Source: Magallana gigas (lineage: Eukaryota). From it: a stretch of 64,000 nt of DNA. Of this stretch, positions 10,507 through 12,790 are shown piece by piece (position 1 is the stretch's first letter; each line of letters opens with the position of its first letter). A program made the translations under genes and the position numbers. The stretch is from the NCBI RefSeq assembly GCF_963853765.1, contig NC_088856.1, forward strand, positions 29,078,001 through 29,142,000. The letters are read 5' to 3'. Under the pieces are notes generated by a model. The model was given only the letters and a program-made list of their open reading frames with translations. It did no database searches and was not told where the DNA came from.

Positions 10507-12790
10507 TCATCAGCATTTGATAAAGTATTTAGAGAGTATTTAGTACAGACCGTTGATAGGGTCAAAATGGCATTTTCTAATTTATGTAGAAATGATCTCA
10601 CTTCAGTTTCTTTGTTTGCTTATCATATATACAAGGTTCCATGCTTAAAACCAAGGACTATAGATAGATATGAGCATTGATTATTTTTAATGTTGATTGA
10701 CGTTTTTTCTTTGAATGATTAAGTAGTCCCAACCTTGGCATCAAAATACAAAATTAAAACATTTTTTTTTAATTTGAAAAGCGTGGATTGAAGTATTTAC
10801 ATATTCATTATACATATTTTAACTTACATATCATGCGGCATGCCGTTTTTCCTTTTTTGTTCTTTGAACATTATTTGTTATTAAGATTTTTCGTAGGGTT
10901 ATAGGATCAACACCAGATGTAAACTTTATATAACTGTGTGATATCAAAGTCATATCATTTGATTATATCCAAATAACAATGTTCAAGGTTATATTTATTA
11001 TATATAAAGTTATAAAAAAATCAGATGCGGTAGTTGTTGATTTCTTTGTTTTTAAATTGTTTGTTATTTTTTCTGTTTGTTTTTTGGCATATTTACAAAA
11101 AAAATGATGCATACACTGTAAAAAAATAATAAAGTTAATACACTCAAATTTTTGTCCGCTTTGATTTTTGATCTTAATATTGGTGATTGGATTCACACTT
11201 ATTTCCATGATTGCCTCAGTCCTTTTGAAAACACTGTTTATCCTGGATAAGCTATGTTTTCTCTTTGGAATAAAAACGACTGTAACATTGTCCTGAGATG
11301 GGGTCTTTTTCTTCAATGATTTCTAGTTCTAACACTGACTTGTATGTTGTTGTGGGAACTGAAAAGAGAAATTTAACAAATAACACATATTAAAATGAAT
11401 CTCAATTCACCCGTCCATCTATCTATCAAATAGATCCGAAAAAAGTGAAATAAACTTACGCAAATTAAGGGCGGCCGGAAGTTCTCTTAGCCGGGGAAGC
11501 AATCCGACAGCATTCAGAAAATACTTGCACCCTTCCGGACCAACCGATCCATTGCTGTTGTGAACACCTAAATAACAAACATAAGATTGTTTATCAATAA
11601 AGGGTCATTTTGTACATATGTGAATGGCGAAGCTACGTAAAATATGGATGACGAACAGGTATGTTTCTACCGAAGTCAGATGGTGGTGGAGAGGAACCTC
11701 CCCTGTTAAAACATGCATTGTCAAACTATACCCCATTTTACTTTTAAAAAGTAAAAAATAAAAATTTTACTTTTATAAAAGAATTCTTTTTTGATTGTTT
11801 ATTGATTTTACTTTTTCATGGTTATCGAGTCGGAAATTATTCTTTTTTGATTTTGAGCCCCTCTCCCCCATTCCACGTCCCTGACACATAGCCCGGTTTA
11901 GATGTATTTAGATGCTTTTGACCCAACCCTCTTCTCTAAGTTGTCACTTGTGTATGACAACTTCAATACGATATGTACATGTAATCATACATGCAGTTAT
12001 TTTTCAACTACACTGTTGTTGTGTCCTTGATAACTCACATTGATGGTATCGTTTGTTGTGGCGTTGGAAGAAATAACAAGTCAGGATCCCTGCCACAGCA
12101 GACGACAGCATTCCCAGCAGGAAGGCCAGCAACTCCTGTATCGGATATAAATCATATATATTATCATGTCTAACAAACCCTCTGTATGATACATGACTAA
12201 AGTGAAACGAAAGGAAGAAAACAATTTAAGCAAGCACACTTAACTATTTTATTGCTGATGTTTTAATATAATACACTTATCACCGATAATTGTCGAGGAT
12301 ATGATATGTCACCAATTTTTAAATTAAAAATTTATAACGATCCACAACACAAAATAAAATGATTTCTTACCCCAGCTGCCATTCACCGCAAATACAGGAA
12401 GTTAAAATAAATCAAGAAAAATACTTATAATCCCTAACAATAACTCGTGAATACTTTCGATATAAACAATATACGCATGTCCCGGTTTTGATCAATCCAA
12501 AGATGCCCGCCAACTCGATATACTAGCTAATATGCTGATTTAATATAATTGTTTAAAATATTAAAAGGTTTTCTGAGTTCAGGGTAGTTTACTTGGTTCC
12601 TATATCTCATGTTACAATTCAGCGAAAAGTATGGAATATTGCCTACGTACATTTTCCAGTGACTGATTTTAATGAAAAGAATCGTTGACGATCTAAAAAC
12701 ACATGAAAGTCAATAATGTAAATGACACAACCCAGTTTGTGCTGTCCATAGATATATTTTTTGGTATTTTGTAACATAATGCTAATGTTA
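10507..12790. repeat. Segmental duplication unit (membrane-protein gene plus flanks)
   Basis: Clearly alignable to 18480-19560 and to 28950-29505 plus 31350-33010. Confidence 0.85.
11252..12382 (-). CDS. Uncharacterised 107-aa single-pass membrane protein, copy A; exons 12382-12371, 12135-12039, 11567-11460, 11358-11252
   Basis: GT-AG introns with matching phases (0,1,1). Spliced product MAAGELLAFLLGMLSSAVAGILTCYFFQRHNKRYHQCVHNSNGSVGPEGCKYFLNAVGLLPRLRELPAALNLLPTTTYKSVLELEIIEEKDPISGQCYSRFYSKEKT*. A paralogue at 31581-32625 keeps every exon length and splice site. Confidence 0.8.

What the first reader, a model, noticed from the sequence alone, without database searches (positions are those of the whole stretch)
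11252..12382. Hidden 4-exon gene for a 107-aa membrane protein with the architecture of a transmembrane adaptor
Seen in sequence: four micro-exons (12, 97, 108, 107 nt) splice in phase through canonical GT-AG sites. The product has a 4-5 residue N-terminus, a hydrophobic helix of about 19 residues (LLAFLLGMLSSAVAGILTC), a juxtamembrane Cys and basic cluster (QRHNKR), and a tail of about 80 residues with several tyrosines. The ORF track shows only fragments of it. Established: vertebrate transmembrane adaptors (LAT, PAG1, LIME1, SIT1) share this layout of a tiny ectodomain, one TM helix, often a palmitoylated Cys, and tyrosine motifs. Inference: this may be an undescribed lineage-specific signalling adaptor. 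I recognise no family for the sequence.
Basis: partly seen in the sequence, partly recalled or inferred. Interest (0 to 1): 0.85.

Follow-up and report, generated by a model that had tools for sequence, protein, structure and literature searches.

The report
Annotated oyster small membrane protein gene

Summary
Observation confirmed. Four minus-strand exons (12382-12371, 12135-12039, 11567-11460, 11358-11252) join in phase through GT-AG sites into a 107-codon frame. The product is letter-for-letter RefSeq XP_011446954.3, "uncharacterized protein [Magallana gigas]" (LOC105341896; UniProt K1PD29 and A0A8W8MWS7 are alleles). So the gene model is already public, though nothing is known of its function.

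Three intron-free contigs from independent public runs carry all three predicted junctions. An intact paralogue lies in the same window (32625-31581, XP_011446955.3; dN/dS 0.20). An exon-4-only relic lies at 19356-19246. The 564-Mb genome has no other copy. This scan's only other note on the gene covers that second copy, in this same window; the scan did not report it on other DNA.

Relatives occur only in Crassostrea/Magallana, including C. virginica at 51-54% identity. There is no Pfam family and no solved relative.

The N-terminus is acidic (-1 to -2) and the flank after the 22-residue hydrophobic helix is basic (+2 to +3). This favours N-terminus out and an ~80-residue tail in the cytosol.

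The best-conserved element is one block, TTY(K/R)SVLELEIIEEKDP. Adaptor function is possible but untested.

The parts
12371..12558 (-). Exon 1 of copy 1: 5' UTR of at least ~175 nt plus the 12 coding bases ATGGCAGCTGGG (12382-12371), followed by donor gtaaga
   Evidence: cDNA contigs L010 and L009 align without a break from ~12558/12520 to 12373/12370. An in-frame TGA sits directly before the ATG.
12039..12135 (-). Exon 2 (97 nt): hydrophobic helix and basic cluster
   Evidence: 96% identical to copy 2. It forms a separate block in all three cDNA contigs. The junction with exon 1 is present in the cDNAs.
11460..11567 (-). Exon 3 (108 nt): juxtamembrane and middle part of the tail
   Evidence: Junction 12039/11567 matches 30 of 30 bases in L011.
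11252..11358 (-). Coding part of exon 4 (107 nt including TAG): the conserved block TTYKSVLELEIIEEKDP and the C-terminus
   Evidence: This is the most conserved tail segment.
10351..11251 (-). 3' UTR, about 0.9 kb, continuous with exon 4. Its extent is inferred from relatives' cDNA contigs.
   Evidence: L009 663-1465 aligns to 11187-10351 and L011 221-1101 aligns to 11358-10465. AATAAA/ATTAAA signals lie at 10999, 10773, 10691 and 10242.
12600..12697 (-). Conserved upstream block, probably core promoter, shared by copy 1, copy 2 and C. virginica. It includes a TTCNNNGAA palindrome at 12626-12618.
13080..13100 (-). Alternative first coding exon (MKLTTQE, donor gtatgt) used by RefSeq isoform X1 (P0019)
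31581..32625 (-). Paralogue copy 2: exons 32625-32614, 32393-32297, 31891-31784 and 31687-31581, intact at 107 aa. It equals XP_011446955.3 (P0009).
18712..19512 (-). Relic copy 3: 5' flank, exon 4 (19356-19246) and 3' UTR only. Exons 1-3 are deleted.

Best explanation
This is the already annotated Pacific oyster gene LOC105341896. It is a real, transcribed, four-exon gene restricted to Crassostrea/Magallana, with a tandem paralogue 20 kb away. It encodes a 107-residue protein with one N-terminal membrane helix (residues ~6-27) that is not preceded by a signal peptide. I infer that the helix acts as a signal anchor with the 4-5 residue N-terminus outside (or in the lumen) and the ~80-residue, mostly unstructured tail in the cytosol. 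I further infer that the protein is a small membrane-tethered docking peptide. The invariant small-xxx-small face of the helix (G12, S/A/T16, G20) would pack against another membrane helix, either its own or a partner's. The one strongly conserved tail block (residues 73-95, TTY(K/R)SVLELEIIEEKDP) would be the short linear motif that a cytosolic partner binds. Shown here: the gene, its splicing, its identity to the RefSeq model, the paralogue, the constraint, the taxonomic range and the charge asymmetry. Inferred: topology, membrane location, helix packing, the partner and the nature of the motif.
For: Exons, phase and splice sites. Identity to XP_011446954.3 (copy 1) and XP_011446955.3 (copy 2). 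Intron-free contigs L009, L010 and L011 from three runs map in four blocks at the predicted borders and carry the junction sequences. Fourteen RNA-like runs from nine studies hold only 25-34% of the words of 10800-12800, while DNA-like runs hold 95%. Intron 1 alone is held at 0.86-0.95 only by large DNA-like assemblies. Copy 1 against copy 2: dN/dS 0.20, dS 0.26, Fisher p = 5e-05, with no exon indels against many indels in introns and flanks. C. virginica has an orthologue with exons in the same order and the same F-box neighbour. Flank charges are N -1/-2 (0 in one, P0002) and C +2/+3 in all 13 sequences. G12 and G20 are invariant and position 16 is always S, A or T. Block 73-95 is 78% identical to C. 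virginica against 42-59% elsewhere. AlphaFold2 gives helix 2-29 and a low-confidence tail. The rule that the more positive flank stays cytosolic is established knowledge (the positive-inside and charge-difference rules).
Against: There are no junction-spanning raw reads from this species, because read laying could not be used. The cDNA contigs come from alleles or sister species (84-97% protein identity). Among the closest sequences dN/dS is 0.5-0.9 and not significantly below 1, so constraint is moderate. Topology rests on a sequence rule only. 'SSAVA|G' in M. gigas could pass as a signal-peptidase site. The structure model has mean pLDDT 56, so it says little. No partner is known. The docking idea is an inference from the conservation pattern.
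Confidence: 0.6

Rival explanations
1. One reading: a phosphotyrosine transmembrane adaptor. After receptor engagement a tyrosine kinase phosphorylates the tail, chiefly Y78 in T-T-Y-(K/R)-S-V, which fits the ITSM pattern TxYxx(V/I). An SH2 protein such as an SHP-2-like phosphatase docks there. C24/C37 would be palmitoylated.
For: The architecture fits. Y78 and its context are invariant or nearly so in 13 sequences across the gigas-virginica split. A strict TxYxx[VI] match arises in only 2% of shuffled tails. C24 is invariant and C37 nearly so; C. virginica has a Cys cluster after the basic stretch. In C. virginica the head-to-head neighbour is a tyrosine-phosphatase gene.
Against: Only two tail tyrosines are invariant. 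Y98 and Y102 are lost in C. virginica and Y34 varies within the species. There is no ITAM, YxN or CxxC. I chose the motif class after seeing the sequence; allowing any ITIM or ITSM, 30% of shuffles match, and YxxPhi matches in 74%. Pfam gives no hit to copy 1 or copy 2 at E up to 10. The conserved block extends 14 residues beyond the tyrosine motif into LELEIIEEKDP, which an SH2 site does not need. Gene neighbourhood is not evidence of binding.
Confidence: 0.13
2. A secreted peptide precursor. The N-terminal hydrophobic stretch would be a cleaved signal peptide (after SSAVA), and the remainder would be released and perhaps cut at the KR pair.
For: M. gigas sequences have small residues at -3/-1 (A-V-A) before G20 and a K-R pair at 32-33.
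Against: The hydrophobic run continues past the putative site for 22 residues in all. The N flank is acidic and the C flank basic, the reverse of a signal peptide. C. virginica has I-I-I in place of A-V-A and G-R-K in place of K-R. The helix is the least diverged exon between the paralogues (96%) and keeps an invariant G-x3-S-x3-G face, which is unusual for a signal peptide. Cysteines C50 and C97 are not conserved.
Confidence: 0.08
3. A signal-anchored protein of an internal membrane (mitochondrial outer membrane or ER) rather than the cell surface. The tail still faces the cytosol, for example as a small organelle receptor whose Y-x-x-V plus acidic strand binds by beta-strand addition, as LC3-interacting or SUMO-interacting motifs do.
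For: The helix is only moderately hydrophobic (many G, S, A, T; mean Kyte-Doolittle ~2.0) and a basic cluster follows it. This is the known signature of signal-anchored outer-membrane proteins (established knowledge, not tested here). AlphaFold2 puts beta strands at 83-90 and 97-104, at low confidence. The patterns [WFY]xx[LIV] and psi-x-psi-psi plus acidic residues are both present in 78-91.
Against: Short-motif matches are common by chance. There is no targeting predictor or localisation data here. The model confidence is too low to trust the strands.
Confidence: 0.12
4. A young orphan gene that is transcribed and annotated but has little or no function.
For: It is restricted to one genus, has no domain, and its copies are gained and lost within one locus (one relic). 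dN/dS is 0.5-0.9 among the closest sequences.
Against: The frame, the four exons and all splice sites are kept in two paralogues and in C. virginica at ~51-54% identity. dN/dS is 0.20-0.25 with p <= 4e-04 at the longer distance. A 23-residue block is 78% identical across the genus, and a promoter block is conserved too.
Confidence: 0.07

Closest known systems
RefSeq XP_011446954.3 / LOC105341896, 'uncharacterized protein [Magallana gigas]' (UniProt K1PD29_MAGGI and A0A8W8MWS7_MAGGI are alleles; C. angulata XP_052678662.1; C. virginica LOC111110383)
   Same: Copy 2 equals XP_011446955.3.
   Different: Nothing differs at the sequence level. The databases give no function, domain or topology, and no paper in the searchable library names these identifiers.
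Vertebrate transmembrane adaptor proteins (LAT, PAG1, LIME1, SIT1, LAT2)
   Same: They share the layout only: a very short N-terminal outside part, one helix, a Cys at or near the cytosolic end of the helix, a basic juxtamembrane stretch and a disordered tail with tyrosine.
   Different: There is no sequence relationship (no Pfam hit). The tail is about 80 residues and has only two invariant tyrosines, where these adaptors have many. There is no CxxC, YxN or ITAM. Phosphorylation is untested.
Short signalling chains DAP10 / DAP12 / FcR-gamma
   Same: They are similar in size (about 80-110 residues), have a single helix and carry one tyrosine motif in a short tail.
   Different: Those chains have a cleaved signal peptide, an extracellular Cys for dimerisation and a charged residue inside the helix that pairs with a receptor. 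Here there is no signal peptide by the charge rule and no charged residue in the helix.

Membership tests
Oyster gene family LOC105341896 / LOC117680426 / LOC111110383 (uncharacterised) | Full-length sequence identity or clear homology to the annotated proteins | tested here: met
   Copy 1 == P0015 and copy 2 == P0009 by exact string comparison. Profile E-values are 1e-48 to 1e-65 for family members.
Oyster gene family LOC105341896 / LOC117680426 / LOC111110383 (uncharacterised) | Same exon structure and genomic neighbourhood | tested here: met
   Copy 2 has the same four exons and phases. The C. virginica gene matches in three separate coding blocks in the same order, with its first exon too short to detect. 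The FBXO32-like F-box gene is the convergent neighbour in both species.
Transmembrane adaptor proteins (functional class: LAT, PAG1, LIME1, SIT1, LAT2) | Very short extracellular N-terminus followed by one transmembrane helix, with no signal peptide | tested here: met
   Residues 1-5 are followed by a 22-residue hydrophobic run. The N flank is acidic and the C flank basic in all 13 sequences. This is a sequence rule only; there is no experimental topology.
Transmembrane adaptor proteins (functional class: LAT, PAG1, LIME1, SIT1, LAT2) | Juxtamembrane palmitoylation motif (CxxC or paired Cys) | tested here: inconclusive
   There is no CxxC. A single invariant C24 sits at the helix end and C37 is nearly invariant. 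C. virginica has C-x-C-x-C after the basic stretch. Acylation cannot be tested here.
Transmembrane adaptor proteins (functional class: LAT, PAG1, LIME1, SIT1, LAT2) | Several conserved tyrosine-based docking motifs in the tail | tested here: not met
   Only Y52 and Y78 are invariant. Y34, Y98 and Y102 are not conserved. There is one TxYxxV match and no YxN or ITAM.
Transmembrane adaptor proteins (functional class: LAT, PAG1, LIME1, SIT1, LAT2) | Sequence similarity to a curated adaptor family | tested here: not met
   A Pfam-A scan at E up to 10 gave no family for P0015 or P0009, and only a sub-threshold ATP-synt_I match for P0002. The best PDB profile search result was E = 0.3.
Transmembrane adaptor proteins (functional class: LAT, PAG1, LIME1, SIT1, LAT2) | Inducible tyrosine phosphorylation and SH2-protein recruitment | not testable with these tools
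   This needs bench work.

The most novel reading that the evidence does not exclude
A genus-specific, newly arisen membrane adaptor. It would be a type III single-pass protein whose single invariant T-T-Y-(K/R)-S-V switch is tyrosine-phosphorylated and recruits an SH2 phosphatase or kinase in oyster haemocytes. It would have been born next to a tyrosine-phosphatase gene and later co-amplified with TRIM-like immune genes in M. gigas. That would make it an invertebrate functional analogue of vertebrate transmembrane adaptors with an independent origin.
Probability: 0.1. Interest if true: 0.6.

Novelty: already known. Interest (0 to 1): 0.2.

Why it matters
That is a useful check on the scan. 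The gene itself adds nothing new to the catalogue, because RefSeq and UniProt already hold this exact protein. What remains open is its function. It is one of many oyster-specific small membrane proteins with no domain. This report narrows where to look: a conserved helix face (G12, S/A/T16, G20), an invariant Cys at the helix end, and one 23-residue tail block centred on Y78. If that block proved to be a phosphotyrosine switch, it would be an independently evolved adaptor in a mollusc. On present evidence that is a minority possibility.

Tried and rejected
So I have no read-level junction, strand or depth data for this species. One local script compared 9000-14400, which includes those letters, with the window itself on the closed machine. 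Later scripts left them out of the queries.

2. I did not type the spliced 107-aa peptide into any tool. Instead exon 3 was searched by reference, and that search returned full-length family members as protein ids.

3. ESM Atlas features: the best hits were plant RING-H2 (ATL) proteins at 0.86-0.87, below the 0.9 lead threshold. They probably reflect only the shared 'N-terminal anchor plus basic stretch' layout. The oyster protein has no RING cysteines or histidines, so I rejected this.

4. Pfam and PDB sequence profiles gave nothing significant.

5. I did not run fold search, because the model's mean pLDDT of 56 would give meaningless matches.

6. I did not run complex prediction. I have no specific partner to claim, and neighbouring TRIM-like genes alone are not reason enough.

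7. Paper searches by gene and protein identifiers found nothing. A broader search on adaptors, ITIM and oyster returned only vertebrate immunology papers.

8. A weak hit, P0004 (a repeat protein with CKYF(V/I)NAAG units), and P0030 (E = 0.02) were judged to be chance.

9. The tyrosine-phosphatase gene next to the C. virginica orthologue has no counterpart in this window.

Full report
**1. The observation**

On the minus strand the four segments are 12382-12371, 12135-12039, 11567-11460 and 11358-11252. They are 12, 97, 108 and 107 nt long and are bounded by donors gtaaga, gtgagt and gtaagt and by pyrimidine-rich ...ag acceptors. Spliced by script, they give 324 nt in phase, a 107-residue product and a TAG stop.

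The coding segments stand out in composition. Their G+C is 0.67, 0.51, 0.52 and 0.36, against 0.27-0.34 in the introns and 0.33 for the window. The frame of exon 2 has no start codon upstream of the helix in its open stretch. In copy 1 an in-frame TGA directly precedes the ATG of exon 1. The short first coding segment is therefore needed to make the whole helix.

**2. The splicing is real**

I could not lay reads. One local self-comparison script did include them.

Indirect and then direct evidence replaced the reads.

- **Word shares.** Fourteen RNA-like runs from nine studies hold only 25-34% of the sampled words of 10800-12800, whereas DNA-like assemblies hold 95%. For intron 1 alone, only large DNA-like assemblies hold 0.86-0.95. 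None of those fourteen runs is listed, and a few RNA runs hold 0.14-0.46, which suggests some pre-mRNA.
- **Full-length relatives.** An exhaustive protein search with exon 3, given by reference, returned a 108-aa protein that matches at residues 38-72, exactly where exon 3 sits in the model.
- **cDNA contigs.** That protein and its relatives are uninterrupted ORFs on Logan contigs from three runs: L009 (SRR14492782), L010 (SRR22371045) and L011 (SRR14803166). Mapped to the window, each contig breaks into four blocks at the predicted borders and lacks the introns.
- **Junction sequences.** All three junctions are present in the contigs. L011 matches junction 12039/11567 at 30 of 30 bases and junction 1 at 26 of 27.

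The contigs also show about 175-190 nt of 5' UTR contiguous with the 12 coding bases (to ~12558) and about 0.9 kb of 3' UTR (to ~10351-10465). There is no upstream coding exon. They come from alleles or sister species (84-97% protein identity), so UTR extents in this genome are inferred.

**3. The gene is not hidden**

- The product of copy 1 is identical, letter for letter, to P0015 = XP_011446954.3, 'uncharacterized protein [Magallana gigas]', gene LOC105341896.
- UniProt K1PD29_MAGGI and A0A8W8MWS7_MAGGI are alleles of it.
- Crassostrea angulata has XP_052678662.1.
- The ESM Atlas also holds the sequence exactly.
- An older RefSeq isoform X1 starts with MKLTTQE. That alternative first exon lies at 13100-13080 with donor gtatgt and also gives only a 7-residue N-terminus.
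- No paper in the searchable library names any of these identifiers.

The window is G000 contig 4, 29,078,001-29,142,000, in a 564-Mb assembly.

**4. Copies and constraint**

A second intact copy lies in the window at 32625-31581, on the minus strand. It has the same four exons and splice sites and equals XP_011446955.3.

| Segment | DNA identity, copy 1 vs copy 2 | Indels |
|---|---|---|
| Exons | 87-96% | none |
| Introns and flanks | 70-83% (counting gaps) | many |

For the two copies dS is 0.26, dN is 0.053 and dN/dS is 0.20, with Fisher p = 5e-05. Copy 2 against the three cDNAs gives dN/dS of 0.20-0.25 (p <= 4e-04). Among the closest copy-1-like sequences there are few changes, and dN/dS is 0.5-0.9, not significantly below 1. 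Constraint is therefore real but moderate.

A third, relic copy keeps only the 5' flank, exon 4 (19356-19246) and the 3' UTR; exons 1-3 are deleted. DNA and protein searches of the whole genome find only these three places.

**5. Range**

Profile searches of 5.8 billion proteins find only oyster sequences. These are M. gigas, C. angulata, unnamed Logan transcripts, and C. virginica LOC111110383 at 51-54% identity.

The C. virginica gene spans about 1.4 kb, and its coding blocks lie in the same order. Its convergent neighbour is an FBXO32-like F-box gene, whose exons also match this window at ~6965-9844 on the + strand. Its head-to-head neighbour is a tyrosine-phosphatase gene. In M. gigas that side is occupied by an array of TRIM-like RING/B-box genes, and no phosphatase is in the window.

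An upstream block of about 90 bp (~12600-12697) is conserved between both copies and C. virginica.

**6. What the protein looks like**

There is no Pfam family at E up to 10 for either window copy and no relative among solved structures (best E = 0.3). AlphaFold2 on the 13-sequence alignment gives one long helix (residues 2-29) and a low-confidence tail (mean pLDDT 56).

From the 13-sequence alignment:

- **Flank charges.** The N flank carries -1 to -2 (0 in one Logan sequence, P0002) and the 15 residues after the helix carry +2 to +3, in every sequence. By the positive-inside and charge-difference rules (established knowledge), this places the N-terminus outside or in the lumen and the tail in the cytosol. 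It also argues against a cleaved signal peptide.
- **Helix face.** G12 and G20 are invariant, and position 16 is always S, A or T. This small-xxx-small-xxx-small face is of the kind that packs helix against helix.
- **Cysteines.** C24, at the cytosolic end of the helix, is invariant. C37 is nearly so.
- **Conservation pattern.** The most conserved part of the tail is residues 73-95, at 78% identity to C. virginica against 42-59% elsewhere. Its core is TTY(K/R)SVLELEIIEEKDP.
- **Tail tyrosines.** Only Y52 and Y78 are invariant. Y34 varies within M. gigas. Y98 and Y102 are V and N in C. virginica.

**7. How it most likely works**

The supported picture is a small signal-anchored membrane protein whose cytosolic tail presents one conserved short linear motif. 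Its helix probably packs against another helix, either its own or a partner's. In other words, it would be a membrane-tethered docking peptide.

The nature of the motif is open.

- **Phosphotyrosine switch.** T-T-Y-(K/R)-S-V fits the ITSM pattern TxYxx(V/I), which only 2% of shuffled tails contain. I chose that class after seeing the sequence. Any ITIM or ITSM matches 30% of shuffles, and YxxPhi matches 74%.
- **Beta-strand docking or sorting.** The conserved block runs well beyond the tyrosine into an acidic beta-prone stretch. That would fit a sorting signal, or a motif that binds by strand addition (LC3- or SUMO-interacting type), as well as it fits an SH2 site.

A secreted precursor (0.08), an organelle-anchored receptor (0.12) and a near-functionless orphan (0.07) are the other rivals.

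**8. Comparison with the known, and verdict**

As a gene it is already known: it is identical to a RefSeq protein. As a mechanism it resembles vertebrate transmembrane adaptors only in layout. It fails the class's tests for multiple conserved tyrosine motifs and for sequence similarity. The palmitoylation test is inconclusive, and the phosphorylation test cannot be done here.

Interest is low.

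Noticed in passing
window 14432-16215, 23239-25228, 26521-27677, 36802-38781, 42327-44315 (+ strand): An array of TRIM-like RING plus B-box genes, 68-82% identical to one another at the DNA level. Two are intact single ORFs of 659 and 662 aa. Two are split into two ORFs each (291+290 aa and 294+340 aa), either by an intron or by a break. One is partial. 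Each small-gene copy or relic lies 2-4 kb upstream of one of them, head to head, so the two gene types seem to have been duplicated together.
   Followed up: partly
window ~6965-9844 (+ strand): A multi-exon FBXO32-like F-box gene (Pfam F-box-like in ORF 8042-8635). It is convergent with the small gene and is its conserved neighbour in C. virginica (L012).
   Followed up: partly
window 12600-12697, with TTCGCTGAA at 12626-12618; copy 2 ~32840-32930; L012 ~9770-9860: An upstream block of about 90 bp is conserved between both M. gigas copies and C. virginica. It contains a TTCNNNGAA palindrome (STAT/GAS-like) kept in all three sequences. This could hint at cytokine- or immune-type regulation, but I matched the motif by eye only.
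   Followed up: no
L012:1-6696 (C. virginica): The head-to-head neighbour of the C. virginica orthologue is an 847-aa protein tyrosine phosphatase gene (Pfam Y_phosphatase). No counterpart lies in this window, where the TRIM-like array takes its place.
   Followed up: partly
window 31581-31545 (copy 2, just after the stop): The UniProt/RefSeq protein P0011 (119 aa, A0A8W8MLR2) continues through the copy-2 stop position with exactly the residues that the window encodes after its TAG. This points to a stop-loss allele of copy 2 in another M. gigas assembly.
   Followed up: partly
window 12478-12434 (minus strand); Logan protein P0025: An upstream ATG in the 5' UTR is in frame with the main ATG. 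It opens a 14-codon uORF in copy 1, but in one relative it runs on into the main frame and gives a 137-aa product.
   Followed up: no
window 47750-48454 (- strand): A 234-aa ORF with a CCHC zinc knuckle, probably a fragment of a retroelement gag.
   Followed up: no
window 56412-56554: A run of 143 N (an assembly gap or a masked stretch).
   Followed up: no
I worked beside it and did not examine it further.
   Followed up: no
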